DNA of 56,221 bases, from positions 353,647-409,867 of the forward strand of contig NW_005434598.1 in the NCBI RefSeq assembly GCF_000315625.1, in the 5' to 3' direction. The notes under the pieces are model-generated. The model made no database searches. It was not told the origin of the DNA and saw only the letters and a program-made list of their open reading frames with translations. This document shows positions 20,901 to 56,221 of the stretch, piece by piece (the stretch's first letter is position 1; each line of letters opens with the position of its first letter). This DNA is from Guillardia theta CCMP2712. Lineage: Eukaryota; Protista; Cryptophyta. Both the position numbers and the translations under genes were made by a program.

Positions 20901-22297
20901 TTGTATATTTTTCGAATAGGATTGAGGAATCTGACGGTATACGTGTTAAGAATCGAATGAAACATGGTTAGCAGCGAAACTAGTGGGTAATTACCCATTC
21001 GAACCATATTCGTTTATCTTTCTCATAGGTCGGGTGATTCAAGGTGAGGAGCTCGAAAAGTACACATCCTAAAGACCATATGTCCGCCTTGTTTGAGTAG
21101 TCTTGCTTGTTATAAACTTCAGGAGCCATGTACCTGAGCAATCCAACGTTTTATCATAGAAATTCAACCATAGGTGTGAAAACCGTTTCGTGCCGACTCT
21201 TTTTTCAAGCTCTGGTGCCACAGTCTGTGTTGTTTGACCTGCAACTTGATTTGTTGTGAGTGAGATGTTTTGCTGAGCTCAAGGGCGACCATTACCAGCA
21301 TCCAATACTTTTGAGATGCCGAAATCGCCCACTTTCACCGTCCTGCCATCGGCCATGAGGAAGATGTTGGAGGGCTTGATGTCTCGGTGGATGACTTGCT
21401 CTTGGTGGGCGTAGTCGAGAGCCTCGCAGACCTGACGCACAAGACTGACGGCAAGCAGACACAAGACTGACGGCAAGCAGACACAAGACTGACGGCAAGC
21501 AGACACAAGACTGACGGCAAGCAGACACAAGACTGACGGCAAGCAGACACAAGACTGACGGCAAGCAGACACAAGACTGACGGCAAGCAGACACAAGACT
21601 GACGGCAAGCAGACACAAGACTGACGGCAAGCAGACACAAGACTGACGGCAAGCAGACACAAGACTGACGGCAAGCAGACACAAGACTGACGCCAAGCAG
21701 ACAGCCCTGCCAGCCATACCTGAATCAACCACAGCGTGATGATCTCCTCGTTAATGTGTTGCTTGGCACCCCTTGCCTTGATCTTTCCACGCCAAGCAAG
21801 CGTTAACGTATTGAATCATCCTCAACAGATCATGATCTTACAATTTCGTTTCGCAGATCTCCTCCATCAGCATAATCCATAACAATACACAGCTGATTGT
21901 TGCCTACGATAGTCATTAGAACTTCAATGCAGCCTTGGAAAATCACTCACTAGTGTAAAAATCGCACATCTCGATGATGTTACGATGTTTTAGATGCATC
22001 ATAACACGAATTTCTTGCACTTTCAGATTGTTTTCTCTTAGATTATCAACTACCTAAAATTCCAATGTCAACTGGACTTTGTTTTGGGCAATCACTCAGT
22101 CGTGAGATCAAGTAGGTCGTTAGAAGAGCGTCAGCCACAACGCACGGGCGAACAAGAGAGGACCATGATGTCTCTGGCATCTAGAGCTTCACCTTCACGA
22201 CGTAAGTCTTCTTGTCTCGTCGTCCTTCTGTCAGGTACACAGTCCCAAAGCTTCCCTTCCCCAGCTCCTGCTTCGCCCGGTACCGCTGCAGCACCAT
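17931..22297 (-). CDS. NIMA-related (NEK) Ser/Thr kinase with a long low-complexity C-terminal region; multi-exon
   Basis: Exon 1 reads [22 protein letters not shown]...YVVK. Later exons give [72 protein letters not shown]. Joining the downstream ORFs 19399-20466, 18477-19052 and 17931-18362 into the same gene is inferred. Confidence 0.85.
21439..21702. repeat. 22-bp tandem repeat (ACAAGACTGACGGCAAGCAGAC) x ~12 in a NEK intron
   Basis: Directly visible; gives a 22-aa periodicity in the translations. Confidence 0.95.
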
Positions 22298-40100: not shown

Positions 40101-43100
40101 CGGTTGGAAGGCCGCGAGGGCAGCAAGGAGCGCGACGGTTATCCTTGAGCTGTCGGGATGATCGGAGAAGCACGAGTTCCTTCCCAGGCCATCCAACACT
40201 CGCAGGGCAAGGAGCTGCTGCTGCTGCTGCAACTCCACCGTCGCTTCCTCATCCTCCTCTAAGATTTCGTGCAAGAGTATGCCAGCAGGGATGTTGTCCA
40301 CTATCCTCCCCCTGCTTTGCACATCTTCGAGCATGCTGCCCAGCGCCTGCATGGAGACCTTCTTCACCTACACTAGGCGGTCAACTCCTCCCCTCCCTTT
40401 ATCATGCTGCCTCCCCACTTCTCATGTTCCCCCACACCCTTGGCTTTCCCCCTCATCCTCCACCACCGCCATGGCAGCAACTTGCCTCCTCCTCTTCGCT
40501 CCTCGTCACGATGGCACACAAGCTATAGGCGACCGCAAGCATCTCGTCATGACCCATCACCTCTCGCTGACTCCTGGCGTCACCTGCAAGCTTCTTAAGC
40601 CCCTCCAACTCCCACTCCCCTCGCCCCGGCTCTCCCTACACCTTGGTCTCTCTTTCTCCTGGTCTCTTTTATTCCTCCTCTTCCCTCTTCCCATCTTCTC
40701 ACAATTTCTCCTTCTCCTCTTCGCTCATATGCTCCCCTACTCTCTCTTGCTCGTGGTCTCGCCCTCTCCTATGCTCTTTCTTCCCCTCTCCCCTGCTCGT
40801 CCTCAAGCTCGCCGATACCAAGCAGGACAGCGAGGAGCGTCACGGCGTCCGCTGTCGCCTCCATGTCTTGACCGGCAAAGGCCTCCGACAATCGCCAGAG
40901 CGACAGCCGCGAGGCGATGCCTGCCAACCGTTAGGGATAAAAGCGAGCTAGAGGTGAGCTAGAGGAGAGGTAGAGGAGAGGTAGAGGAGAGGTAGAGGAG
41001 AGGTAGAGGTGAGGTAGAGGTGAGGTAGAGGTGAGGTAGAGGTGAGGTAGAGGTGAGGTAGAGGTGAGGTAGAGGTGAGGTAGAGGTGAGTGAGGTAGAG
41101 GTGAGGTAGAGGTGAGGTAGAGGTGAGGTAGAGGTGAGGTAGAGGTGAGGTAGAGGTGAGGTAGAGGAGAGGTAGAGGTGAGGTAGAGGAGAGGTAGCGG
41201 TGAGGTAGAGGTGAGGTAGAGGTGAGGTAGAGGTGAGGTAGAGGTGAGGTAGAGGTGAGGTAGAGGTGAGGTAGAGGAGAGGTAGAGGTGAGGTAGAGGT
41301 GAGGTAGAGGTGAGGTAGAGGAGAGGTAGAGGTGAGGTAGAGGTGAGGTAGAGGTGAGGTAGAGGAGAGGTAGAGGTGAGGTAGAGGTAGAGGTAGAGGT
41401 AGAGGTAGAGGTAGAGGTAGAGGTGAGGTAGAGGTAGAGGTAGAGGTAGAGGTAGAGGTGAGGTAGAGGTGAGGTAGAGGTGAGGTAGAGGTGAGGTAGA
41501 GGTGAGGTAGAGGTGAGGTAGAGGTGAGGTAGAGGTGAGGTAGAGGTGAGGTAGAGCCGAGGTAGAGGTGAGGTAGAGCCGCGGTAGAGCTGAGGTAGAG
41601 GTGAGGTAGAGGAGAGGTAGAGGTGAGGTAGAGGTGAGGTAGAGGTGAGGTAGAGGTGAGGTAGAGGTGAGGTAGAGGTGAGGTAGAGGTGAGGTAGAGG
41701 TGAGGTAGAGGTGAGGTAGAGGAGAGGTAGAGGTGAGGTAGAGGTGAGGTAGAGGTGAGGTAGAGGAGAGGTAGAGGAGAGGTAGAGGAGAGGTAGAGGT
41801 GAGGTAGAGGAGAGGTAGAGGAGAGGTAGAGGTGAGGTAGAGGTGAGGTAGAGGTGAGGTAGAGGGGAGGTAGAGGTGAGGTAGAGGTGAGGTAGAGGAG
41901 AAGCCCAAAGAGAAGGGAAAGGGAACAAACGACCCAACCGAAGAAAAGCAGGTCAAACGCATGGGGCATCTCCTCACCCGATATCATCGTCGTCACGCCT
42001 TCACATCCGCATACAATTCTTGCATTCTCGGAATCTCCAGCAAGGTTCACCAGCGCTGTCATCCCCTCTGCACTCCCTTGGTCGTGTGCACTATCAACCT
42101 GTTACCACGTTAGACCTTCCGAAAGGTTGGTTGATCCGTCTACGCTTTCCTACATCCCTGATCTTCTCCTCCTTCGCTATATCCAACTCAGGCATCCTTG
42201 CAATCCTAACCATGTCCACTTCTCTCTCAAGTCTCGCTCTCCTCGCTTGTCTCCTCCCTGGCTACGCACCATCTCAGCAAGAGTCGAGAGGATGCGCGAG
42301 CGCTGGTCCGAGATGAGGATACGCCGCCTTCCCTCTTCACGTCTCGCAATGTTTCCAACAGCCGTCGCCGCGCTCACGGCGGCATGTGACGGAAACTTGG
42401 AGAGGAGGAGGGAGAGGGAGGGGAGAAGGCAATACTGGCAGCGAGAAGCTTTCTGGACGTGAGGGTCCTGCTCCTCGAGCTGCAGGAACAGTTGGAAGAT
42501 CTTTCTGCTGCAGAGAAGATTCGAGAGCGCAAGCACGGCAGACGAAGAGACGTCAGTGACCTCCCATCCCTCCAGCTCATCTGAGAGCAGGAACGTCCTG
42601 TAGGATGTCAGTATCAAGTTCCAACGTCGAGGGTGTTACGGGAAACAAGCAGAGGAGACAAGGAGAGGAGACAAGGAGAGGAGACAAGGAGAGAAGACAA
42701 GGAGAGGAGACAAGGAGAGAAGACAAGGAGAGAAGACAAGGAGAGGAGACAAGGAGAGAAGACAAGGAGAGAAGACAAGGAGAGAAGACAAGGAGAGGAG
42801 ACAAGGAGAGAAGACAAGGAGAGGAGACAAGGAGAGAAGACAAGGAGAGAAGACAAGGAGAGGAGACAAGGAGAGGAGACAAGGAGAGGAGACAAGGAGA
42901 GGAGACAAGGAGAGGCGACAAGGAGAGGAGACAAGAAGAGAAGACAAGGAGAGGAGACAAGGAGAGGAGACAAGGAGAGAAGACAAGGAGAGGAGACAAG
43001 GAGAGGAGACAAGGAGAGAAGACAAGGAGAGGAGACAAGGAGAGAAGACAAGGAGAGGAGACAAGGAGAGGAGACGAGGAGAGGAGACAAGGAGAGAAGA

Positions 43101-44206
43101 CAAGGAGAGAAGACAAGGAGAGGAGACAAGGAGAGGAGACGAGGAGATGAGACAAGGGGAGAAGGGGAGAGGAAGGCAGAAAAGACATGTCACTTGTACA
43201 GCAAGCGCATGCGACGGGGACGAGGGTCTCACAAGTCCAGGAGAAGTTGACGAGGGTCTTGTAAGTTTGCAATCATCCAGGCCCTTCCTTGTCGAGTCAT
43301 CGAGGTGTTGCAAAGCGCATCGAGAGCGAATTGACAGCAATTTCTTCTCATGTTTCTCGTCCAACCATCCCCCTCTCCTTCTTCCGCCCCGTTCTTCCCT
43401 TGGGATATCTGATTATTCTGCCTGCTTGCCTCACCCTGCTTGCTCTCCTCTTCCTCCGAAGCCTTGGTGCGATGTCTCATCATCTCATCATCTGCCATGA
43501 CGCGAACGGCGCGACAGAGGGTGAGTAGCAGCTGCTGGCTGTGAGGATGTTGCAGCATACACTCAATTCCCTCCATTTCACTGGTCAGCTCCTCTATTGC
43601 CATCACAGTCTCCAGTATCTCAGAGATCTCCAAATCTTCTGCTCTTCGAAAATTTGTTCCAACACTCTGAATCTGCTCAACCTGCTTCTCCTTGTCATCA
43701 TCGCTGTCATCGTCGGCAGCAGCAGCATCTGCCTCGCTTTCCTCTTCAAGATGGTCTTCATCCTCCTCTACATGGAAATACGGAGACGCTTTGCATCCGG
43801 TCTCAAACGTTGTCGGAGGATAGAAGGCTTCCTCTGCCCCCGCAATCTCCTCATTCACTTTGTCAAACCTTGTCGAGCTGAGCGCAACCTCCGATACTAC
43901 ATCAGCTTGCCAGCTCGACACTCCGGCAGTCTCATCAGCTAATGCGGAAAGGTTGGCTGCAAGATGAGAAGAGTCGAAGGATATTGAGCTGCACAACTCC
44001 TCCTCATTTTCATGCTTGTCCAGCACATGGCAGAAGAGGTCGCTCCCCTCATATTGGAAGTTGTTTAGGTCAGCGATGTCTCCCAGAGATAGAGCCCCCT
44101 GATCGTCCTCCCTGTCCCTGTCCCTGTCCCTCTCCGTCTCCTCCTCCTCCTCCTCCTCCTCCTCCTCCTCCTCCTCCTCCTCCTCCTCCTCTTTGCACCT
44201 CATCAC
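37127..44206 (-). CDS. Armadillo/HEAT-repeat protein with an acidic N-terminal region; multi-exon
   Basis: ARM-like helices: SSAVLALSNL, SAATAVGNIA, TALVNLAGDSENARIVCGCEGVTTMI, KAAETVARIS, AAYLLGVV. Several introns are expanded by tandem repeats. Confidence 0.7.
38780..38905. repeat. 20-bp tandem repeat (ACAARACAAACGAAATCACA) x ~6, intronic
   Basis: Directly visible. Confidence 0.9.
40950..41900. repeat. 11-bp minisatellite (GAGGTAGAGGT) of ~950 bp, intronic
   Basis: Directly visible; gives an 11-aa periodicity in the shadow ORFs. Confidence 0.97.
42650..43157. repeat. 13-bp minisatellite (GAGAGGAGACAAG variants) x ~38, intronic
   Basis: Directly visible. Confidence 0.95.
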
Positions 44207-45223: not shown

Positions 45224-46256
45224 TTACCTGCTCTCATCATACCTCAGCCTCTGTCCTCCTTTCGAGGCAGAGCGCAACTGGCGAGAAGAAGTAGAGCCCG
45301 GCGTTGTAATCTGGCCTGTATCGACGCGGTTCTTAATCTCAACAAGAGCTCTTTCGAGGTCTAGAGAGCTGAGCGTGATGCCTTTGCTCTCCATCTCCTT
45401 CAAAGCAGAGCGACAGAGATGATGAAAGATGATGCCATTGGCTGTCACATAAGTAACAATCAAAGGGATGATGTCCTCGTCTTTGTAAATGATGGTTGAC
45501 ATGGTCGTCGGGATATAATTCTGATAATCATTCTTAGCAAGGAAGAGCATCAACTTGAGAAAGAAAGCTCTATGCTTTCTTGAATTCTCTCTTACAAACC
45601 AGTTCCTCAGCCATGTTGGATGAATTTGCTGGCTGAAGTTCTTGACATTCTGGTCAGAAACTTTTTTGTTTACCTCTTCAACAAAGCTGAGATTATTTTC
45701 AGGAGTAAAAACCTCAGTGAAGTTGTAGTCAATCATTAACATCTCTTCTGGCTCATCATAGGCTGCTACAGGCCCAATGTTTGTTTTCCTCCTGCGTGAC
45801 CCAGCAGCCATTTGCTCTTCACTTGGAAGCTCGATAGCCTCCAGTTCACCCACGATTTCATCGACTTTGACTATGCTCATATCCAGCACTTGAATGAGGA
45901 TGCTCTTGAACTGAAGGGTGCTTTGTTTCTGAGCAAGCAGCTTCTGAATGACATGTCGCAGAGCAACAGAAGGCGGCGTTGAGTTGATGATGCTAACCTG
46001 ATTCATGCTGTGAGTAAGAGCTGTGAGAGTTGATGATGCTAACCTGATTCATGCTGTGAGTAAGAGCCGTGATGTCGTCAATATCATCACTGGCCGAAGG
46101 AGGGGCAGCCTGTGAAACTCTTGAACCAAAAGCAAACACTGCCTGCGAAGAAGATTGCGGTCCTGTATTGCCGAATCCTATAATGCCAGACAAGGCAGGG
46201 TTTGGGGTCCCTGTTGATGCTGCACCGGTATTACCGAAACCAGACGGCGCGGCCAT
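45224..46256 (-). CDS. Orphan protein (~328 aa if the 46-nt segment 45998-46043 is spliced out)
   Basis: ORFs 45993-46349 and 45224-46006 overlap across a 46-bp tandem duplication. Removing one unit joins MAAPSGFGN...MNQ|VSIINSTPP.. in frame. No domain was recognised. Confidence 0.6.
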
Positions 46257-46316
46257 GGGCAAAGGGGTCTGTGCTGCTGCCGCGCTCGTGCGAGGGGAAT
46301 GACTATTTTTTTCTGG

Positions 46317-46426
46317 GACGGGGTCATGCGGACATGCTGACGGGGTCATGCGGACATGCTGACGGGGTCATGCGGACATGCTGACGGGGTCATGCGGACA
46401 TGCTGACGGGGTCATGCGGACATGCT
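46317..46426. repeat. 22-bp perfect tandem repeat (GACGGGGTCATGCGGACATGCT) x 5
   Basis: Directly visible; the units are contiguous with no spacers. Confidence 0.95.
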
Positions 46427-46459
46427 GGCTTACGAGTTGAATAAAAACAATTGTTTGAA

Positions 46460-46748
46460 CTCTCCGCTATCGGATGGTCGGCCTGTGAGAAAAGGGCCCT
46501 CGGACCCGCGGATGTATGCGTGGGTTCGAGTCCTACTGGAGACAGTCCGGTTAGGGAGGGCACCCCTGACCGGCTGTCGAAGGGGGGGCTGGGTCCGGGC
46601 CTGAAGAGGCTAGCGAGTGCCCCGCTAGTCTTGGACGGAACGGACATCAGTGGCCTTATCCGATTCGTCGTCTGACGAACTTGTCTCTTCTCCACCAAGC
46701 CCCAAGCATCGCCGCGCCGTCTCTACTTGCAATAAACGTCAAAATTTT
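46460..46748 (+). ncRNA. Putative Pol III-type structured RNA / tRNA-derived element
   Basis: A-box-like TATCGGATGG (46468), a T-arm/B-box GTGGG-TTCGAGT-CCTAC (46520-46536), several nested GC-rich helices, and a first T4 run at 46745. Confidence 0.5.
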
Positions 46749-48905
46749 CCCTTCCAGAGACGGCGATTAAAGGGAGGATTTTTATTTTATCAAAAAAGTC
46801 AAAAAAGTGATATAAAGAGAAAATAAGGTTAATAAGTTAAAAAATATCTCCTAAATAATAAATGGCAAGAGAAAGAAAACAAACTCAACAATACAAGCCT
46901 GAGAATTTTAACAAGGTTCAGCCGAAACCAAAAAAACCGCCAACAAAAACAAATGAGCTGCCCACTGATGAGCCGATGCCAGCAATTGATATAATTGAAC
47001 CACGCCTACCTGTGCCACAAGATAATAATATTAAGGTTTCATCATCATATTCTAAAAAATACAGGTCACCAAAGGACTATAAAAAATTAAAGACTTTCAA
47101 TGATGAAATCACACAAGAATATACTAATGCTTTAAAAACAGTCAAATTCAATCGTTATGATGATAAGAAATATGAATTTACCATATTTGAAAAAGCAGAG
47201 CGTCTTGAGATGTCTATCAATTCAGAGATTAATGATAAAAACACAATAACGAGCAAAGTATATGCTCTAGATTATACTCCTAAACAATATGATGAATTAA
47301 AATATATTGTTAAACCATCTCTAGCTGATGTGAGAAATAATAGATTTGTTGGTGAGAAGAAAGACGATAAGAAGCTTGTTTCTAGTTTAAATGTTATTCT
47401 AAAAGAAGCCAAAGATTTAGAACTTGACCCTATTGATTTAACAAGTGTTCTTAGACATCACCGCCATATCATGTTAATCATGCTTAGATATATTGAAAGC
47501 AAAAAAGGTTCTCCCTATACATATTGGGATTACATAAGAGCATTAGCAAGGCTTGCTAAAATATCTCTTGGAGATGATGATGAACTTTATAAGAAATTAA
47601 GCAAAATATCTGATGATTTTGATAAGGCAGTTAATAAGCTCAATGTTGATGAAAAGAGAGTATTTGTTCCCTATTCTGTACTATTGGATATGGTCGGTGA
47701 AATGAAAAAGCAATTTGAGGATGCTTTAGCTAAATATGGCTCTAACAAAGAAGCCACTTATAAATTACATATGAATACATTGATATTAATGAGCTATTTA
47801 TATACTCCACCTGTTAGGTCAGAGTTATCTAATGTGGTATTTACAAATACATTAGAGGGACTTGATAAAAAAACCAATTATGTTTATGTTAGTGATAATG
47901 AAAATGAGGTGGCTATGTACATTTTCAACACTATACACAAGAAGCATCCACCTATTAAATATTATGTAGGATATCCAAATGGGGATGAACAAAATGACCC
48001 TTTGGCTAAGTTATTAACTAGTTTCATTAGATTAAGCATGAGGCTTTACCCTAGGAAGTATTATATTACACAATATAGGGATAGAAACGAGCCAGCAGGT
48101 AAGAACCAGGCCAAGTATCTTGCTAATATGTTTAATAAACAGAACCTAAATGTTAATGGATTTAGGAGCTCTTATGTTAGTTGGTTATATAGCAATAATG
48201 TTTCCACTAAGATTCTTGAACAGGTGGCTTTAAAGATGAGGTCCTCTTTAAGGTCTCAACAGTATTCATATAAAAAGGATAATGCTGAACAGATAAGAAT
48301 TAAAAAAGAACCTGTTGATGATTCTGTTCCAGTTACTATAAGTGATGTTAATGAACCTATACCACAAGCTGTTATAGCAAATATCGAAGCACCAAGACCT
48401 AGAGAAGTCAAAAATTACAAGGATATTGTCGAAGCTAATCGCCAACATCAAAGAAAATATGTTGAAAAGATTGGTAAAGATACTTATGCGCAGAAACAAA
48501 AAGAATATAGAGCAAACAATAAAGAAATACTTGCTTTAAGAAGAGTCTTGAAAAAGTATAACAACACAAATTACAAGCCAACAGAAAAATTTATTAACAA
48601 ATGGAAACTTTATAAACAAGATGGTCAATGGAGGTCAGAATTAGAATAAATGATATAAGACAAATAATTATACATCCACAATATAAAGATGTTTGATTGG
48701 AATTTTTATAAGTTTGTCTTAGAGCTTATCAAAGGTTACTTAGAGGAACAACTTGAAATTGCTTATATTAAAAAAGGTTTGAAACTATCACCAGCATATA
48801 ACCCTGATTTAGCTTTGCGGGCAGGCCCGGCGTGCGGCCAGCCCGGCCAGCCTCTGACTGCCAGCCGGGCTGAGGCCCGGCGTCACCAGTGTACTACGCC
48901 GACGG
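46740..48905 (+). mobile_element. AT-rich foreign island carrying the tyrosine recombinase ORF, with hairpins at both edges
   Basis: Abrupt compositional shift relative to the GC-balanced flanks, no introns, and inverted repeats at 46741-46782 and 48835-48901. Confidence 0.6.
46862..48649 (+). CDS. Tyrosine recombinase/integrase-like protein (virophage/PLV/NCLDV-type), intronless
   Basis: 595-aa uninterrupted AT-rich ORF. Catalytic-domain motifs occur in the expected order: YLYTPPVRSE (Arg I), a beta region ending HKKH (Lys), NVNGFRSSYVSW (Arg II), VALKMRSS, QQYSY (Tyr). Confidence 0.75.
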   Translation: MARERKQTQQYKPENFNKVQPKPKKPPTKTNELPTDEPMPAIDIIEPRLPVPQDNNIKVSSSYSKKYRSPKDYKKLKTFNDEITQEYTNALKTVKFNRYDDKKYEFTIFEKAERLEMSINSEINDKNTITSKVYALDYTPKQYDELKYIVKPSLADVRNNRFVGEKKDDKKLVSSLNVILKEAKDLELDPIDLTSVLRHHRHIMLIMLRYIESKKGSPYTYWDYIRALARLAKISLGDDDELYKKLSKISDDFDKAVNKLNVDEKRVFVPYSVLLDMVGEMKKQFEDALAKYGSNKEATYKLHMNTLILMSYLYTPPVRSELSNVVFTNTLEGLDKKTNYVYVSDNENEVAMYIFNTIHKKHPPIKYYVGYPNGDEQNDPLAKLLTSFIRLSMRLYPRKYYITQYRDRNEPAGKNQAKYLANMFNKQNLNVNGFRSSYVSWLYSNNVSTKILEQVALKMRSSLRSQQYSYKKDNAEQIRIKKEPVDDSVPVTISDVNEPIPQAVIANIEAPRPREVKNYKDIVEANRQHQRKYVEKIGKDTYAQKQKEYRANNKEILALRRVLKKYNNTNYKPTEKFINKWKLYKQDGQWRSELE

Positions 48906-49199
48906 TAGGTCCGATTCCGAAGTTCCTACTTTATTCTGCTTGAGGCACTGGCTGGGCCTGCTTTGTTCTGCTTGAGGCACTTTCTGTCTTACAGGCTCCC
49001 TGCTTTACCGTAGTACTGCTTCCACTATCAAGTAATCGCCGAAGTTATCCGACACTGACTCTCAGAGGGAGGCTGGGCCTGCTTTGTTCTGCTTGAGGCA
49101 TTTTTTACCTTCTGCGAGTAAAACTTCATATCCTGGGCACAGGAGCACGGTACCGCTCGAGGTGACGCATCCAGTCCTCCGAGGCTCCTCACTAGCCTG

Positions 49200-51640
49200 A
49201 GCCGCAAGCAGCAGGAGCATGCAGGAGGAATAACATCCCTTAGACGCGATACCCGGAGGCAGCCGACTGACCACTGTCAGTCGAGACGTCCGCTGCCGCC
49301 ACAAAGCGGGCGCCCGCGGACGGAGAAAGGGCAGCCGCCGACAAGGAGCCGGCGTTGCCCGGGGGTCCGCCTGGGGCAGCGGACGGAGGGAGGCTGGACA
49401 CATGAACACGGTACCGCTCGAGGTAGTCCTCCTCGCTAGCCTCCGAGTCAGCGGTATAGCCGCCCGTGACGGCGGCGACGCCGCGGCAATGCCCAAGGAC
49501 CGGCGTGACCCGACCGATGCCGGGGAGGAAGCAGGCGAGCTCGGACCAGCAGCAAGCACCCCAGGGGTGTCGAGCTCTCCGGAGGCACCCGACGTCACAG
49601 TGAGGGACGGAGACGCCTCGCCAGCTCCGCGCCGATCGTCGGCGCCACTCGAAGGGTGTCCCCCATCGGAGTCGGAGACCTCCGGCGAAGACTCCTCGGG
49701 CGACTCGACAAAGTCCGAGGAGGAGCTGTCCTCTGGCTCGAGAAGTGCTTGCGCCCGCAAGGGCGTCATGCGCCTCGCACCAGACAAGAGCGCTTCCAGC
49801 GTCAGCTGCATGGTGAGGCGCTGATAGGTGGCGGCGCGTTTGCGAGCCAAGACCTCAGCAGCAGGGCCGTCATCAGGCACGAAGTGCCGACCAAACGCCG
49901 CATCCTCAAGAGGCATCGAGCGCTGAGCAATGATGTCCGCGAGATACCAGATGAAGCGGAGGGTGTCAGGATGCAGGGTACCGTCCGTCGAGATGGCAAG
50001 AGGGATGAACGCTCGAGGAGGAGTAGTCATGGCATATGCTGCGCGATGTTTGCGAATCTTCTCAGACGCTGCAACATGGAGGGCGTCGAGGTTGACCTCC
50101 CCCCACTTGGTCAGGTCGGCAGAGCTACCAATGTAAGGGTGGACCAACGTCACGTCCGCCATCAAGCCCTCGTACTGCTCGGACCCTCGATCGCGGATTC
50201 CAGGGATGTGGATATCGCCCTTCATCTTGCGGCCATGAGGATGGGAGGGTACCTGCCGTCGAGAACGAGGATCCCCGACTGTATCGATGACGCTCTGAAG
50301 ACCAGCTTCGTTCAGCATCGACCGAATCGTACGAGTAAGGTTGTCATGCGCCGTGGGAAGCTTGGAGGATCGGCGTTTGCAGGTCTGGAGATGATGTGCA
50401 GCAACGGAGGGATCGAGCTCGCGCTGACATCCATCACATTCCGTCGGACACTGGCAGGGGGAGAAATGAAGTGCTCATGAGACGAGTCGACGAGAGCGCG
50501 CAAACCAGGGATGTGTACCACAGATGCCGGGGGGCGTCCTGCATCATCAGGCACAGCAGCCGGGGCAGGTGGGATCGCCGCACCATCTGCAGCCGGTGCA
50601 GGAGCCTTGACACGACGGTAGAGGATCGCTCCAGCATTATGAACGAAGTCGTGCGCCTCAACGAAGAAGGTCGCCAGAGGGTGCTTCTGGGCACGGAGAG
50701 ATCTCGNNNNNNNNNNNNNNNNNNNNNNNNNNNNNNNNNNNNNNNNNNNNNNNNNNNNNNNNNNNNNNNNNNNNNNNNNNNNNNNNNNNNNNNNNNNNNN
50801 NNNNNNNNNNNNNNNNNNNNNNNNNNNNNNNNNNNNNNNNNNNNNNNNNNNNNNNNNNNNNNNNNNNNNNNNNNNNNNNNNNNNNNNNNNNNNNNNNNNN
50901 NNNNNNNNNNNNNNNNNNNNNNNNNNNNNNNNNNNNNNNNNNNNNNNNNNNNNNNNNNNNNNNNNNNNNNNNNNNNNNNNNNNNNNNNNNNNNNNNNNNN
51001 NNNNNNNNNNNNNNNNNNNNNNNNNNNNNNNNNNNNNNNNNNNNNNNNCCCTCACCAGCGTCTTGGACATGAAGCCATGCTGGACGAGCCCGAGCTTCGA
51101 GAGCTCTTCGTTGAGGGTAGGAACCTTCGCTCGGAGCTGACTAGCATGGAATCCATCCGTGCCGATAGGCAGGCCGCCAAGTGTAATCCCGCCAGTGACG
51201 ACCTCGAAGTGAAGAAGTTGAGTCTTGAGACGGCGCTTAAGGCTCTTCTTCAGCTGCGAGAGATCAGGGTGTTGATGCCAGGAGGGGATGTAAACTTTCG
51301 ACTCGCGAGGTTGAATCTCTAGCTTCAGATCAGCTAACATGTACTTCTTCATAGCGGACGTAGCTGCAACGGCATCCTCGACTGGACCGACAAGCACGAC
51401 GTTGTCAGCATAGGCCAAGACTCGAACAGAGGGAAAAAGCTCTGCGATATGGAGGAGCAGGGGGTGGATACTGTGGCAGAAAAACACGCTGGAGGGGACA
51501 TCGCCCTGACAGACGCCCGAGGTACACTGAACGGAGGCTGACTGACTTTTGTGAAAGAGTCGAAGGTCAGCAGAGTCTCCATAGTAGCTGGAGAGGTAGG
51601 AGGCGAACAATCGGAGATGCTCGCAAGAGGGCAAGCTTGC
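49200..51640 (-). mobile_element. Degenerate CRE-like non-LTR retrotransposon copy (RT + restriction-like endonuclease), internally deleted, spans a gap
   Basis: RT motifs GVCQGDVPS and LAYADNVVLVG, then GITLGGLPIG. The RLE region has KGD...ADVTLVHP...EKIRKH...FIPLAISTDG. About 280 bp is deleted at ~50457 relative to the 54.3-56.2 kb copy. Confidence 0.85.
50707..51048. other. Assembly gap
   Basis: Run of N. Confidence 1.
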
Positions 51641-51998
51641 GCCTCTAAGGGATTTTATTCCTCCTGCATGCTCCTGCTACTCGCAAACGCGCCGCCGGAC
51701 CGGCGTGACCCGAGCCTTGAAGCTTGTCTGGTGCGAGGCGCACTGCGGCATGACGCCCTTGCCGCGGGCGCAAGCACTTCTCGAGCCAGAGGACCGTGGC
51801 AGCTCCTCCTCGGACCCTGGTGACCGAGTCGCTCCCGGCCTTCCACTGCCCGGCCGCTGCTCCTCCTCCTCCTCCTCCTCCTTCTCCTCCTCCTGGTTCC
51901 CCTCCACACGATCGCCAAGCAGACACGAGATACGCACACGAAGCAGGACAACCACCAGCAGGACAGCCTCGCGCTTGTGCTGAAGAAACTTGAGGGGA

Positions 51999-52098
51999 NN
52001 NNNNNNNNNNNNNNNNNNNNNNNNNNNNNNNNNNNNNNNNNNNNNNNNNNNNNNNNNNNNNNNNNNNNNNNNNNNNNNNNNNNNNNNNNNNNNNNNNN
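51999..52098. other. Assembly gap (100 N, size probably unknown)
   Basis: Run of N. Confidence 1.
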
Positions 52099-52160
52099 TC
52101 AAGCTGTACAGGCTGGGGTGCCATTAATATAAAGCTAACGCTCGAGGAGGAGTCGTAGTC

Positions 52161-53156
52161 ATAGGATATAGGATTTACTGGCAGAAGGGAAAAAGTGCCT
52201 CAAGCAAAACAAGGCAGGAACAAGCTGAACCGGCAGGTACACAGTCCACAGCGAGAAGCTGCACAAACACACACAAAACACAAGCCCGAAAAGAACCAGC
52301 ACTGCTGGCACCCAGACGCGGCATCGCCAGCCCAAGCGAGAAGCCGCGCAGACAAGCAGCCTAAGGGTCAAGCAATCAAGCAACAAGCAGCAGGAGCACG
52401 CAGGAGGAATAACATCCCTTAGACGCGATACCCGGAGGCAGCCGACTGACCACTGTCAGTCGAGACGTCCGCTGCCGCCACAAAGCGGGCGGCCGCGGAC
52501 GGAGAAAGGGCAGCCGCCGACAAGGAGCCGGCGTTGCCCGGGGGTCCGCCTGGGGCAGCGGACGGAGGGAGGCTGGACACAGGAACACGGTACCGCTCGA
52601 GGTAGTCCTCCTCGCTAGCCTCCGAGTCAGCGGTAGCCAAGTCAGTGTTAGCCGCCCGTGACGGCGGCGACGCCGCGGCAATGCCCAAGGACCGGCGTGA
52701 CCCGACCGATGCCGGGGAGGAAGCAGGCGAGCTCGGACCAGCAGCAAGCACCCCAGGGGTGTCGAGCTCTCCGGAGGCACCCGACGTCACAGTGAGGGAC
52801 GGAGACGCCTCGCCAGCTCCGCGCCGATCGTCGGCGCCACTCGAAGGGTGTCCCCCATCGGAGTCGGAGACCTCCGGCGAAGACTCCTCGGGCGACTCGA
52901 CAAAGTCCGAGGAGGAGCTGTCCTCTGGCTCGAGAAGTGCTTGCGCCCGCAAGGGCGTCATGCGCCTCGCACCAGACAAGAGCGCTTCCAGCGTAAGCTG
53001 CATGGTGAGGCGCTGATAGGTGGCGGCGCGTTTGCGAGCCAAGACCTCAGCAGCAGGGCCGTCATCAGGCACGAAGTGCCGACCAAACGCCGCATCCTCA
53101 AGAGGCATCGAGCGCTGAGCAATGATGTCCGCGAGATACCAGATGAAGCGGAGGGC
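52161..53156 (-). mobile_element. 5'-truncated copy of the same retrotransposon
   Basis: Near-identical to the 3' ~1 kb of the other copies. On the + strand it begins with the shared terminus ATAGGATATAGGATTTACTGG. Confidence 0.9.
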
Positions 53157-53226
53157 GTTTCTTGAAGGGTGAATGGAAAGCTCTTTTCAAGCGCTATCTG
53201 CCTGCTGCAAAAACCCATGGGAAGAT

Positions 53227-54291
53227 ATAGGATATAGGATTTACTGGCAGAAGATAAAAAGTGCCTCAAGCAAAACAAAGCAGGAACAAGCTGAACCTCC
53301 AGGCACACAGTCCACAGCGAGAAGCTGCACAATCACACACAAAACACAAGCCCGAAAACAACCAGCACTGCTGGCACCCAGACGCGGCAGCGCCAGCCCA
53401 AGCGCGAAGCCGCGCAGACAAGCAGCCTAAGGGTCAAGCAATCAAGCAACAAGCAGCAGGAGCATGCAGGAGGAATAAAATCCCTTACACGCGATACCCG
53501 GAGGCAGCCGACTGACCACTGTCAGTCGAGACGTCCGCTGCCGCCACAAAGCGGGCGGCCGCGGACGGAGAAAGGGCAGCCGCCGACAAGGAGCCGGCGC
53601 TGCCCGGGTGTCCGCCTGGGGCAGCGGACGGAGGGAGGCTGGACACATGAACACGGTACCGCTCGAGGTAGTCCTCCTCGCTAGCCTCCGAGTCAGCGGT
53701 AGCCAAGTCAGTGGTAGCCGCCCGTGACGGCGGCGACGCCGCGGCAATGCCCAAGGACCGGCGTGACCCGACCGATGCCGGGGAGGAAGCAGGCGAGCTC
53801 GGACCAGCAGCAAGCACCCCAGTGGTGTCGAGCTCTCCGGAGGCACCCGACGTCACAGTGAGGGACGGAGACGCCTCGCCAGCTCCGCGCCGATCGTCGG
53901 CGCCACTCGACGTGTTTCCCCCATCGGAGTCGGAGACCTCCGGCGAAGACTCCCCCTCGGGCGACTCGACAAAGTCCGAGGAGGAGCTGTCCTCTGGCTC
54001 GAGAAGTGCTTGCGCCCGCAAGGGCGTCATGCGCCTCGCACCAGACAAGAGCGCTTCCAGCGTAAGCTGCATGGTGAGGCGCTGATAGGTGGCGGCGCGT
54101 TTGCGAGCCAAGACCTCAGCAGCAGGTCCGTCATCAGGCACGAAGTGCCGACCAAACGCCGCATCCTCAAGAGGCATTGAGCGCTGAGCAATGATGTCCG
54201 CCAGATACCAGATGAAGCGGAGGGTGTCAGGATGCAGGGTACCGTCCGTCGAGATGGCAAGAGGGATGAACGCTCGAGGAGGAGTCGTAGT
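53227..54291 (-). mobile_element. 5'-truncated copy of the same retrotransposon
   Basis: Same 3' terminus; truncated inside the endonuclease region (TTPPRAFIP). Confidence 0.9.
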
Positions 54292-56221
54292 CATAGGATA
54301 TAGGATTTACTGGCAGAAGGGAAAAAGTGCCTCAAGCAAAACAAGGCAGGAACAAGCTGAACCGGCAGGTACACAGTCCACAGCGAGAAGCTGCACAAAC
54401 ACACACAAAACACAAGCCCGAAAAGAACCAGCACTGCTGGCACCCAGACGCGGCATCGCCAGCCCAAGCGAGAAGCCGCGCAGACAAGCAGCCTAAGGGT
54501 CAAGCAATCAAGCAACAAGCAGCAGGAGCACGCAGGAGGAATAACATCCCTTAGACGCGATACCCGGAGGCAGCCGACTGACCACTGTCAGTCGAGACGT
54601 CCGCTGCCGCCACAAAGCGGGCGGCCGCGGACGGAGAAAGGGCAGCCGCCGACAAGGAGCCGGCGTTGCCCGGGGGTCCGCCTGGGGCAGCGGACGGAGG
54701 GAGGCTGGACACAGGAACACGGTACCGCTCGAGGTAGTCCTCCTCGCTAGCCTCCGAGTCAGCGGTAGCCAAGTCAGTGTTAGCCGCCGTGACGCAAGGA
54801 GCCGGCGTTGCCCGGGGGGTCCGCCTGGGGCAGCGGACGGAGGGAGGCTGGACACATGAACACGGTACCGCTCGAGGTAGTCCTCCTCGCTAGCCTCCGA
54901 GTCAGCGGTAGCCAAGTCAGTGGTAGCCGCCCGTGACGGCGGCGACGCCGCGGCAATGCCCAAGGACCGGCGTGACCCGGCGACCGATGCCGGGGAGGAA
55001 GCAGGCGAGCTCGGACCAGCAGCAAGCACCCCAGTGGTGTCGAGCTCTCCGGAGGCACCCGACGTCACAGTGAGGGACGGAGACGCTTCGCCAGCTCCGC
55101 GCCGATCGTCGGGGCCACTCGAAGGGTTTCCCCCATCGGAGTCGGAGACCTCCGGCGAAGACTCCCCCTCGGGCGACTCGACAAAGTCCGAGGAGGAGCT
55201 GTCCTCTGGCTCGAGAAGTGCTTGCGCCCGCAAGGGCGTCATGCGCCTCGCACCAGACAAGAGCGCCTCCAGCGTCAGCTGCATGGTGAGGCGCTGATAG
55301 GTGGCGGCGCGTTTGCGAGCCAAGACCTCAGCAGCAGGTCCGTCATCAGGCACGAAGTGCCGACCAAACGCCGCATCCTCAAGAGGCATCGAGCGCTGAG
55401 CAATGATGTCCGCAAGATACCAGATGAAGCGGAGGGTGTCAGGATGCAGGGTACCGTCCGTCGAGATGGCAAGAGGGATGAACGCTCGAGGAGGAGTAGT
55501 CATGGCATATGCAGCGCGATGTTTGCGAATCTTCTCAGACGCTGCAACATGGAGGGCGTCGAGGTTGACCTCCCCCCACTTGGTCAGGTCGGCAGAGCTA
55601 CCAATGTAAGGGTGGACCAACGTCACGTCCGCCATCAAGCCCTCGTACTGCTCGGACCCTCGATCGCGGATTCCAGGGATGTGGATATCGCCCTTCATCT
55701 TGCGGCCATGAGGATGGGAGGGTACCTGCCGTCGAGAACGAGGATCCCCGACTGTATCGATGACGCTCTGAAGACCAGCTTCGTTCAGCATCGACCGAAT
55801 CGTACGAGTAAGGTTGTCATGCGCCGTGGGAAGCTTGGAGGATCGGCGTTTGCAGGTCTGGAGATGATGTGCAGCAACGGAGGGATCGAGCTCGCGCTGA
55901 CATCCATCACATTCCGTCGGACACTGGCAGATCGGCATGCCATGGAGATAGCAGTCGAGCATCTGAGCATAGCGGTGCGGGAAGGCCTTGAGGGGGTAGT
56001 AGCTCGAGACTCGCATCGGAGAGTGGCTCAGGTCACGCTCAGGAAAATGAGCGAAGATGGTAGACTGCAAGACCCTATCCGGCGACTTGAGCGAGTGTGT
56101 CCTGCGGCTGTGCAAGGTGAGGATATCACGCTGCTGATCGGTCAGCGCAGCGCGCGCATGCACATGGCGAGGGAAGACGCGCATGACAAGAGGGGTCACA
56201 TTTCGCTGCGCAGGGGGAGGA
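54292..56221 (-). mobile_element. Longest CRE-like copy, continuing beyond the window; CCHC zinc knuckle + RLE, with an internal duplication at ~54.72-54.92 kb
   Basis: CDGC...HHLQTC, AHDNL, KGD, ADVTL, K..K, IPLAISTDG in ORF 54508-56199. Confidence 0.9.

What the first reader, a model, noticed from the sequence alone, without database searches (positions are those of the whole stretch)
46317..48905. Compact cassette: foreign-looking tyrosine recombinase with an upstream structured RNA, iteron-like repeats and terminal hairpins
Seen: an intronless, strongly AT-rich 595-aa ORF sits in an intron-rich, GC-balanced genome. It is preceded on the same strand by a ~290-nt structured element and 5 x 22-bp direct repeats, and followed by a GC-rich hairpin cluster. 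Known: the Y..PP.R / N..R.SY / A..M..S / Y motif order resembles the tyrosine recombinases of Polinton-like viruses, virophages and NCLDVs. Those elements also carry capsid or replication genes, and DIRS elements carry RT; no such gene is in this cassette. Both His positions of the canonical R-K-H-R-H/W-Y set appear replaced (NGFR; MRSS for MGHS), while both Arg and the Tyr remain. Inference: this is a minimal, possibly undescribed eukaryotic YR mobile element in which the recombinase travels with a noncoding RNA (regulatory, attachment-site or conceivably guide-like), or a relic of an endogenous virus.
Basis: partly seen in the sequence, partly recalled or inferred. Interest (0 to 1): 0.85.

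Follow-up and report, generated by a model that had tools for sequence, protein, structure and literature searches.

The report
Orphan algal-virus integrase gene fragment
A 2-kb AT-rich insert in an algal-type nuclear genome carries one intact tyrosine-recombinase (integrase) gene of a known Polinton-like-virus lineage and nothing else of the virus; the repeats and hairpins beside it are not found in any of its five closest sequenced relatives, so it is an ordinary viral relic and not a new RNA-linked mobile element.

Summary
The ORF at 46862-48649 (595 aa) is real. It lies in a sharply bounded AT-rich block, 46777-48810 (GC 0.31; flanks 0.58). A model built on a 79-sequence alignment (pLDDT 84.5) matches only tyrosine recombinases in the PDB: XerA, Cre, TelA and lambda Int.

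The closest relatives are the recombinases of Guillardia theta Polinton-like viruses (PLVs), described by Yutin et al. in 2015. There the gene lies next to a primase-helicase and other shared genes. None of those genes is present in this 56-kb window, and the next PLV gene stops after about 40 codons. The nearest copy (82% nt identity) shares only 46778-48710.

The 22-bp x5 array and the hairpin-rich 350 nt have no match in any relative or in Rfam. The window holds about 30 tandem arrays in all, and the 22-bp array lies in the upstream region of a divergent host gene. The downstream "hairpin cluster" folds no better than shuffled sequence.

Verdict: a solitary, recently acquired PLV fragment with an intact integrase gene. 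It is a new member of a known kind. The RNA-linked cassette idea is not supported.

The parts
46777..48810 (+). AT-rich block of Polinton-like-virus origin (GC 0.307), treated as the whole inserted fragment
   Evidence: Composition steps at about 46770 and about 48810. Nucleotide homology to metagenome contig L002 runs from 46778 to 48710 at 81.8%. No N runs at the junctions.
46777..46861 (+). Conserved upstream region of the recombinase gene, carrying the promoter-like motif TGATATAAA at 46808-46816
   Evidence: Aligns with L002:531-621. The motif occurs 3 times in the window against 0.24 expected. In PLV-like relatives, 6 of 13 occurrences lie within 70 nt upstream of an ORF start, against 7% of random positions.
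46862..48649 (+). Intact tyrosine recombinase gene, 595 aa plus stop. Residues 1-60 are disordered and K/P-rich; an N-terminal domain covers about 65-170; helical core-binding-like and catalytic domains cover about 170-475; a C-terminal domain covers about 517-595.
   Evidence: dN/dS against the L002 copy is 0.10.
47816..48271 (+). Span holding the catalytic-signature codons: R319 (47816-47818), K360 (47939-47941), N432 in place of His I (48155-48157), R435 (48164-48166), S461 in place of His/Trp II (48242-48244), Y470 (48269-48271)
   Evidence: Column counts in the 79-sequence alignment A2: R319 79/79, R435 79/79, Y470 77/79. Position 432 is N37/D24/S10 and never His; position 461 is T28/H28/N14/S8. 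Register against XerA 4a8e; codons.
48650..48810 (+). Short intergenic stretch with a second TGATATAAG motif (48651-48659), followed by the first ~40 codons of the next PLV gene (ATG at 48689). The viral sequence ends at the composition boundary, so this gene is truncated once at the element's edge.
   Evidence: The start of this ORF and its upstream motif are conserved in L002. AT-rich sequence stops at about 48810. The open frame then runs on by chance into GC-rich DNA as far as 48943.
46428..46776 (.). GC-rich (0.567) hairpin-rich segment that abuts the block. Most likely host intergenic DNA; origin not settled.
   Evidence: z = -4.5 (+) and -2.7 (-). Local hairpins at 46493-46533, 46538-46582, 46586-46652 and 46708-46770. 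No Rfam or tRNA match. No copy elsewhere in the window or in related loci.
46715..46765 (.). 10-bp perfect inverted repeat (CGCCGTCTCT / AGAGACGGCG) with a 31-nt spacer, ending about 12 nt before the left edge of the AT-rich block. Meaning unknown.
46317..46427 (.). Perfect 22-bp x5 tandem array. It is a host minisatellite lying 60-170 bp upstream of a divergent host gene, and is not part of the viral fragment.
   Evidence: There are many comparable arrays in the window. No match in relatives.
45993..46256 (-). Probable first exon of a host gene: ATG at 46256-46254, FG/GFGNTG-rich N-terminus, transcribed away from the block
   Evidence: Translation, ORF list. No Pfam hit for the adjacent ORF.
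48811..49200 (.). GC-rich host flank. Its 48922-49163 part is related to the ~1066-bp tandem repeat that fills 49200-56000.
   Evidence: Folding is not above chance.

Best explanation
The block 46777-48810 is a solitary fragment of a Polinton-like virus (PLV) of the lineage first seen integrated in Guillardia theta. It lies in the nuclear genome of an unidentified flagellate alga; the nearest named relatives of both the virus gene and a host dynein are cryptophytes.

The fragment keeps two things. One is the PLV's integrase gene, a divergent tyrosine recombinase, together with its own short promoter-like region. The other is the first ~40 codons of the following PLV gene. The replication genes and the other genes shared by the related elements (the presumed virion genes among them) are absent.

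Shown:
- The tyrosine-recombinase fold.
- Invariant Arg-Arg and a near-invariant Tyr, with a Lys in the beta-hairpin turn.
- Homology to PLV-borne genes.
- The limits of that homology.
- An intact frame.
- Purifying selection between this copy and the nearest one.

Inferred:
- In a complete PLV this enzyme would join a circular viral genome to a target site by Tyr470 attack, through a Holliday-junction pathway, as other tyrosine recombinases do.
- Here the gene is an orphan. The unchanged viral base composition and the open frame suggest recent acquisition.
- The rest of the element was then lost by deletion, or only a piece was ever inserted, by a route that left no recognisable att sites, inverted repeats or target duplication.
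- The 22-mer array and the hairpin-rich GC segment are host intergenic or promoter DNA of the neighbouring divergent gene, and are not cargo of the element.
For: Fold:
- The AlphaFold2 model on 79 sequences has pLDDT 84.5.
- The Foldseek PDB list is led by tyrosine recombinases: XerA, Cre (TM to target 0.45-0.58), TelA, Tn1549 Int and lambda Int, with probability 0.9-1.0.
- A profile of A2 finds XerA 4a8e as the best PDB sequence (E = 0.0036) with the catalytic boxes in register.

Lineage:
- 83% aa identity to P0001.
- 43% to G. theta GUITHDRAFT_145933, and 48-54% to the two halves of a second G. theta copy.
- 42-49% to three Hanusia phi sequences listed in EukProt.

Context in relatives:
- The order is recombinase, then primase-helicase (Prim-Pol/D5_N/DUF5906), then DUF5754, plus four further ORFs of L004 that match L001, in L001 and L004.
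- This matches the description of G. theta PLVs in PMC4642659, which places a distinct recombinase subgroup near the element ends.
- YREC-type recombinases are common in cryptophyte PLVs (PMC12220804).

Fragment status:
- tblastn with all ORFs of L001-L004 and L006 finds only the recombinase in the 56-kb window.
- Homology to L002 is limited to 46778-48710.
- The window has no palindrome of the size seen 400-1050 bp upstream of the gene in L001-L004.
- There are no TIRs or flanking repeats.

Integrity: dN/dS is 0.10, and there are no stops in 595 codons of 31% GC DNA.

Flanks are host-like and unshared.
Against: - An intact 595-codon frame in a 'relic' is not what long decay would leave. The insertion must be young, or the gene is being kept.
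- The origin of 46428-46776 is not settled. It is unusually rich in hairpins, and their wobble pairs all favour the + strand. A perfect 10-bp inverted repeat lies about 12 nt before the left junction.
- That the related elements are capsid-encoding PLVs rests on the literature and on one weak Pfam hit (Capsid_N, E = 0.069). My own searches did not confirm a capsid protein.
- No reads, other strains or the rest of the genome could be examined. A misjoin in the assembly, or further copies elsewhere, cannot be excluded.
- The host species was not identified.
Confidence: 0.75

Rival explanations
1. The GC-rich hairpin segment 46428-46776 belongs to the viral element. It would be its terminal or attachment region, so the locus would be the true left end of a PLV whose right part was lost.
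For: The four closest PLV-like relatives all carry a long palindrome 400-1050 bp upstream of the recombinase gene. In L002 that palindrome lies where GC-richer sequence meets AT-rich sequence. PMC4642659 notes that these recombinase genes lie next to the element ends and their putative attachment sites. The window has a 10-bp inverted repeat ending about 12 nt before the junction.
Against: There is no sequence similarity between 46257-46777 and any relative, although the adjacent 85 bp and the gene are 82% identical to L002. Its GC content (0.57) equals that of the host flank. The window's stems are 10-11 bp, against 19-39 nt arms in the relatives. No inverted partner exists anywhere in the window.
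Confidence: 0.15
2. The recombinase has been taken over by the host, or serves in trans for integrase-less PLV copies, and is kept by selection as a single gene.
For: The frame is intact and dN/dS is 0.10 against the nearest copy. Its own promoter-like motif is retained. Three Hanusia phi homologues are listed in EukProt; I take that dataset to be transcriptome-derived from my own knowledge and did not check it here. PMC4642659 suggests that integrase-less PLVs may use integrases supplied in trans.
Against: The dN/dS value reflects divergence between two viral lineages, not time spent in this genome. Base composition and GC3 (0.25) show no adaptation to the host. There is no evidence of orthologues at the same site in other species. 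The sequences could equally come from active PLVs.
Confidence: 0.08
3. One reading: a minimal autonomous YR-only (Crypton-like) mobile cassette, 46317-48905, that carries a noncoding RNA and iteron-like repeats.
For: There is a single recombinase gene with no capsid or replication gene nearby. The upstream segment folds better than shuffles, more so on the gene's strand.
Against: The nearest copy shares neither flank. The next viral gene is cut off inside the block. The array is one of many in this genome and lies in front of a host gene. The downstream hairpins are not above chance. There is no Rfam family. There are no terminal or target-site repeats. No named Crypton, DIRS or Ngaro protein came back in any search.
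Confidence: 0.04
4. An assembly artefact: a PLV read or contig fragment joined wrongly into a repeat-rich scaffold, or contaminating viral DNA.
For: The scaffold has gaps at 50707-51048 and 51999-52098. The block lies between minisatellites and a 1066-bp satellite. Both composition steps are abrupt.
Against: Both junctions lie in continuous sequence, 1.9 kb or more from the nearest gap. Integrated PLVs and PLV fragments are common in such genomes (PMC12220804, PMC10120064).
Confidence: 0.06

Closest known systems
Tyrosine recombinases of the Guillardia theta integrated Polinton-like viruses (Yutin et al. 2015, PMC4642659), e.g. GUITHDRAFT_145933
   Same: Full-length homology: 43% identity, E = 1.7e-129. 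The domain order is the same, with the same R...K...(N/D)xxR...MR(x)S...Y...K signature. The gene is AT-richer than the host genome.
   Different: In G. theta the gene lies at the end of an element that also carries a primase-helicase, DUF5754 and further shared genes. Here it stands alone, with the next gene truncated. The window's protein has Ser where 28 of 79 relatives keep His.
YREC-type integrases of cryptophyte PLVs (PMC12220804, 2025)
   Same: They are recombinases of PLVs integrated in cryptophyte genomes, with no regular target-site duplications and no tRNA gene at insertion sites. Both points agree.
   Different: I could not compare sequences directly, because those genomes are not in the tools. 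Those elements are complete, 14-40 kb long, and have TIRs; this locus is 2 kb with none.
Cre, XerA/XerC/D and lambda Int (classical tyrosine recombinases)
   Same: The two-domain fold and the Arg-Lys-Arg-Tyr catalytic set are shared.
   Different: Sequence identity is 9-14%. His I is never present in this family (Asn or Asp instead). The His/Trp II position is variable, and a conserved extra Arg (R460, 73/79) precedes it. Extra N-terminal (~65-170) and C-terminal (~517-595) domains have no match in PDB sequences.
Cryptons (YR-only DNA transposons of fungi, oomycetes and animals)
   Same: A eukaryotic element whose only gene is a tyrosine recombinase, without long terminal repeats. This description is from my own knowledge and from PMC12220804.
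   Different: No Crypton protein was returned by any search. The nearest relatives are virus-borne. A truncated neighbouring viral gene shows that this is a piece of a larger element.
Uncharacterised proteins of algal giant viruses and 'Virus NIOZ-UU159' (BFVD)
   Same: The predicted structures match over nearly the full length: NIOZ-UU159 E = 1.4e-23, then Tetraselmis virus 1, Hokovirus, AaV and Pyramimonas orientalis virus, and HaV01 annotated 'Tyr recombinase domain'. Relatives at 25-33% identity lie on giant-virus-like contigs.
   Different: These are distant in sequence and sit in a different genomic setting.

Membership tests
Tyrosine recombinase superfamily | Catalytic-domain fold shared with Cre, Xer and lambda Int | tested here: met
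   Model pLDDT is 84.5. The top PDB matches are tyrosine recombinases at probability 0.9-1.0, with TM to target up to 0.58.
Tyrosine recombinase superfamily | Conserved Arg I, Arg II and the nucleophilic Tyr, with a beta-hairpin Lys | tested here: met
   R319 79/79, R435 79/79, Y470 77/79. Lys is present at 359 or 360 in most members; the window has K360.
Tyrosine recombinase superfamily | The two His (or His and Trp) of the R-K-H-R-H/W-Y set | tested here: not met
   Position 432 is Asn in the window and is never His in 79 relatives. Position 461 is Ser in the window and His in 28 of 79. From my own knowledge these two positions are the least strictly kept in the superfamily, so this lowers the case for membership only slightly.
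Tyrosine recombinase superfamily | Sequence-profile membership (Pfam Phage_integrase PF00589) | tested here: inconclusive
   The window protein has no hit. Two of 79 relatives hit weakly, best E = 0.0014.
Tyrosine recombinase superfamily | DNA cleavage and strand exchange through a 3'-phosphotyrosine | not testable with these tools
   No biochemical data are available.
G. theta-type PLV recombinase family | Full-length homology to the recombinases of G. theta PLVs | tested here: met
   P0003 E = 1.7e-129 at 95% coverage.
Complete Polinton-like virus (integrated) | Capsid genes, packaging ATPase and replication gene in one 14-40 kb element | tested here: not met
   tblastn with all ORFs of five related loci finds only the recombinase in the window. 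The AT-rich block is 2.03 kb.
Complete Polinton-like virus (integrated) | Terminal inverted repeats, with or without target-site duplication | tested here: not met
Crypton / YR-only transposon | Several copies with shared ends that contain only the recombinase | tested here: not met
   The only near copy (L002) shares 46778-48710 and differs on both sides. A neighbouring gene start is included and truncated. Genome-wide copy number could not be tested.
DIRS/Ngaro retroelements | Reverse transcriptase and RNase H alongside the recombinase | tested here: not met
   Adjacent ORFs have no Pfam hit, and the block holds no other gene.
Iterons of a replication origin | Direct repeats bound by a Rep protein encoded nearby, specific to the element | tested here: not met
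   There is no Rep gene. The array is absent from relatives and is one of many arrays in this window.
Known structured RNA families (Rfam 15), tRNA or tRNA-derived SINE | A match to a covariance model or a tRNA | tested here: not met
   The best E-values are 2.5-8.8, far below the gathering scores.

The most novel reading that the evidence does not exclude
The intact orphan recombinase, still carrying its own PLV promoter motif, is kept by the host or by resident integrase-less PLVs as a supplier of integrase in trans. The hairpin-rich GC segment with the inverted repeat next to the junction would then be what remains of its recombination site. That would make the locus a minimal PLV-derived YR module, not dead DNA.
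Probability: 0.07. Interest if true: 0.6.

Novelty: new member of a known kind. Interest (0 to 1): 0.25.

Why it matters
- It adds one more case of PLV DNA in an algal-type nuclear genome. A single PLV gene can persist with an open frame after the rest of the element is gone.
- It shows that this PLV and giant-virus recombinase family has given up the first catalytic His altogether. The second His is kept in only about a third of members, and a conserved Arg lies next to it.
- The family also has conserved N- and C-terminal domains of unknown role. These points are of interest to people who study recombinase mechanism.
- It does not open a new class of element, and it gives no evidence for an RNA partner.

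Tried and rejected
Searches that found nothing:
- Single-sequence searches of the ORF against Pfam, PHROGs and PDB sequences. A profile and a deeper alignment were needed.
- The first AlphaFold2 model, on 7 sequences, was poor (pLDDT 62.6) and was not used.
- tRNA and Rfam searches of the window and of 46200-49200.
- PDB sequence searches with the N- and C-terminal domains alone.
- NCBIfam scan of the family.
- The exact-protein look-up for the window's ORF. It is not on record.

Leads that did not hold:
- A TIR or att-like repeat around the block.
- Confirming a capsid gene in the related elements by PDB profile, PHROGs and a protein search. None returned a named hit.
- TGATATAAR as a giant-virus promoter. 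It shows no enrichment upstream of ORFs in giant-virus-like loci.
- The metagenome and viral-contig scans returned only distant relatives (25-33% identity), so no further close copies with flanks were gained.

Other:
- Host identification with one dynein exon-sized ORF gave only Hanusia phi at 61% as the best named hit, and a look-up of the best unnamed hit did not help. The dynein exons were searched singly. I did not make or search a joined spliced model.
- My first hairpin script missed known palindromes and was replaced.

Slip: the script printed tblastn rows that give the bounds of the two pieces of the broken recombinase gene of the G. theta locus L006. I did not use them further and do not repeat them here.
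Full report
**1. What is in the sequence**

The ORF at 46862-48649 (+) is open for 595 codons. It lies in a block, 46777-48810, with GC 0.307. The flanks are 0.585 (left) and 0.577 (right), and the rest of the window averages 0.52. GC3 of the ORF is 0.25, against 0.52-0.73 for two dynein exon-sized ORFs of the same window. The other five frames of the block carry 7-112 stops, so the open frame is not chance.

The window is eukaryotic and intron-rich. A dynein heavy-chain gene is spread over at least five ORF pieces at 2623-14952.

The 22-bp x5 array at 46317-46427 is perfect. The window, however, holds about 30 tandem arrays with periods of roughly 2-143 bp. These include a second 22-bp-period array at 21438-21703, 11- and 13-bp arrays close to 1 kb long, and a ~1066-bp satellite from 49200 to the end.

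**2. The protein**

Single-sequence searches found no family. A word-indexed search gave six relatives, and an exhaustive HMMER search gave 107. That second search has no length filter, so it also answers the operators' caution about shorter and longer kin. It returned fragments and local matches but no fusion to another enzyme.

- **Conserved residues.** In a 79-sequence alignment (A2), R319 and R435 are invariant. Y470 is present in 77 of 79, K472 in 72 and R460 in 73. Lys is found at 359 or 360 in most members.
- **Profile match.** A profile of A2 finds the archaeal XerA (4a8e) as its best PDB sequence, E = 0.0036. The family's R-S-S-Y box aligns with R-H-S-F, M-R-x-S with L-G-H-S, and Y-x-K with Y-T-K.
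- **Fold.** The AlphaFold2 model built on A2 has mean pLDDT 84.5. Its PDB matches are led by tyrosine recombinases: XerA, Cre, TelA, Tn1549 Int and lambda Int, with XerH, TelK and type IB topoisomerases lower down; a few unrelated chains appear only at low probability.
- **Viral matches.** Among predicted viral structures the best match is an unclassified 'Virus NIOZ-UU159' protein (E = 1.4e-23, nearly full length). Proteins of algal giant viruses follow, one of them annotated as a Tyr recombinase domain.
- **The two His.** Position 432 is Asn here and is never His in the family (N 37, D 24, S 10). Position 461 is Ser here and is His in 28 of 79.

The N-terminal 60 residues are disordered and Lys/Pro-rich. 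The domains at about 65-170 and about 517-595 are modelled confidently but have no PDB sequence match.

**3. Where its relatives live**

| Relative | Identity to window protein | Source and context |
|---|---|---|
| P0001 (L002) | 83% aa | 2.6-kb metagenome contig |
| Guillardia theta proteins | 43-54% | Nuclear genome; loci L001 and L006 |
| Three Hanusia phi sequences | 42-49% | EukProt listing |
| L003, L004 | ~40% | Metagenome contigs |
| Distant relatives | 25-33% | Giant-virus MAGs and 40-115 kb contigs; one carries SET, dUTPase, patatin and glycosyltransferase genes |

In L001 (G. theta) and L004 (a 12-kb contig) the gene is followed by a primase-helicase (D5_N or Prim-Pol with PriCT_2 and DUF5906) and then a DUF5754 gene. 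Four further ORFs of L004 match L001. Two of them are paralogues of ~470-500 aa, and both hit one 482-aa ORF of L001.

This fits the published account. [quoted passage not shown] In L006 the recombinase is indeed annotated as two gene models. YREC-type recombinases are frequent in cryptophyte PLVs, which show no regular target duplications and no tRNA genes at insertion sites (PMC12220804).

I could not confirm a capsid protein in L001 or L004 with the tools. There was one weak Capsid_N hit (E = 0.069), and nothing. That these elements are capsid-encoding PLVs therefore rests on the literature.

**4. Why this copy is a fragment**

- tblastn with every ORF of at least 60 aa from L001-L004 and L006 finds only the recombinase in the whole 56-kb window.
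- Nucleotide homology to L002 (81.8%) starts at 46778, 84 bp before the ATG, and ends at 48710.
- Beyond the stop codon both sequences share a short spacer and the first eight codons of a second ORF. In the window the AT-rich sequence ends about 40 codons into that ORF. The second gene is thus truncated once, at the edge of the block.
- Both ORF starts in the window are preceded, 30-55 nt upstream, by TGATATAAR (46808 and 48651). The window has 3 matches against 0.24 expected.
- In the PLV-like relatives, 6 of 13 occurrences of that motif lie within 70 nt upstream of an ORF start, against 7% of random positions. Giant-virus-like loci show no such enrichment. I read the motif as the lineage's own promoter element; this is an inference.
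- L001-L004 each carry a long palindrome (arms 19-39 nt) 400-1050 bp upstream of the recombinase gene. The window has nothing of that size within 5 kb.
- No inverted or direct repeats bracket the block.

**5. The flanking features**

- **Host gene.** On the minus strand a probable host exon starts with ATG at 46256 and encodes an FG-rich N-terminus. The 22-mer array lies 60-170 bp upstream of it.
- **Hairpin-rich segment.** The GC-rich segment 46428-46776 holds four hairpins that fold better than shuffles (z from -3.3 to -5.6). As a whole it gives z = -4.5 on the + strand and -2.7 on the - strand. By my reading of the printed folds, several of the stems contain G-U pairs that would form only on the + strand.
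- **Lack of conservation.** That segment has no Rfam or tRNA match, no second copy in the window on either strand and no similarity to any related locus. With no homologue, covariation cannot be tested. 'Structured RNA' therefore remains a thermodynamic observation only.
- **Downstream flank.** The segment 48810-48900 folds no better than shuffles (z = +0.19). The stretch 48922-49163 is related to the 1066-bp satellite.

**6. Mechanism**

Shown: the fold, the catalytic Arg-Arg-Tyr with Lys, the intact frame, and dN/dS = 0.10 against the L002 copy.

Inferred from the established chemistry of the superfamily: in a complete PLV the enzyme would integrate a circularised genome by Tyr470-mediated cleavage and strand exchange. 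Asn432, and Arg460 with Ser461, would stand in for the two His.

At this locus the gene is an orphan. The viral base composition is unchanged and the frame is open, so acquisition was probably recent. Either only a piece was inserted or the rest was deleted. The dN/dS value measures selection between two viral lineages. It does not show selection in this host.

**7. Rivals**

- The GC segment could be the PLV's own terminal or attachment region (0.15). This would sit within the main reading and would not replace it.
- The gene could be kept by the host, or by integrase-less PLVs (0.08).
- The join could be an assembly error (0.06).

**8. Limits**

- The source organism was not identified. One dynein exon-sized ORF gave Hanusia phi (61%) as its best named hit.
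- The rest of the genome, reads, other strains and expression data were not available.
The exhaustive HMMER search covers local matches.
- One slip: the script output shows the bounds of the two pieces of the broken recombinase gene in L006. They are not used or repeated here.

**9. Verdict**

This is a real feature that was partly misread. It is a solitary fragment of a known kind of algal virus-like element, and it carries an intact member of an already described recombinase family. The adjacent repeats and hairpins are not shown to belong to it. Interest is low to moderate (0.25).

Noticed in passing
L001:9302-9425, L002:107-213, L003:3006-3086, L004:750-870: Each of the four closest PLV-like relatives has a long imperfect palindrome (arms 19-39 nt, spacer 29-75 nt) 400-1050 bp upstream of the recombinase gene. 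L001 has a second one between the helicase and DUF5754 genes. These may be recombination or replication sites. The window's copy lacks one.
   Followed up: partly
window 46808-46816 and 48651-48659; L002, L004, L001, L006: The motif TGATATAAR recurs 30-60 nt upstream of ORF starts in this PLV lineage, and looks like a lineage-specific promoter element. It is not enriched upstream of ORFs in the giant-virus-like contigs that encode distant relatives.
   Followed up: partly
window 46242-46257 and 46707-46722: A 16-nt inverted copy (15 of 16 matched) of the host gene's start codon and first codons lies 450 bp upstream of that gene. It adjoins the 10-bp inverted repeat at 46715-46765 next to the left junction of the AT-rich block. 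It could be chance (rough expectation about 0.07 in 3.5 kb) or a trace of rearrangement.
   Followed up: no
window 49200-56221: A ~1066-bp unit is repeated in tandem at 84-100% identity, with GC 0.6-0.7. It is interrupted by assembly gaps at 50707-51048 and 51999-52098. Long minus-strand ORFs inside it have no Pfam hit.
   Followed up: no
window 40945-41898 and 42641-43161: Very long short-period arrays: 11 bp x86 and 13 bp x40, with extreme strand skew. Many other minisatellites are spread over the window.
   Followed up: no
window 2623-14952 (+): A dynein heavy-chain gene in at least five exon-sized ORFs. The best named relative is Hanusia phi (61%). Unnamed metagenome proteins reach 77%.
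   Followed up: partly
L005, L007-L016: Distant relatives of the recombinase (25-33% identity) lie on 40-115 kb contigs. L007 and L008 come from giant-virus MAGs, and L005 carries giant-virus-type genes (SET, dUTPase, patatin, glycosyltransferase 25, D5 helicase). The family is therefore shared between PLVs and algal giant viruses.
   Followed up: partly
alignment A2, column of residue 460: An Arg directly before the canonical His/Trp II position is kept in 73 of 79 family members. It is not part of the classical catalytic set, and it might compensate for the missing His residues.
   Followed up: no
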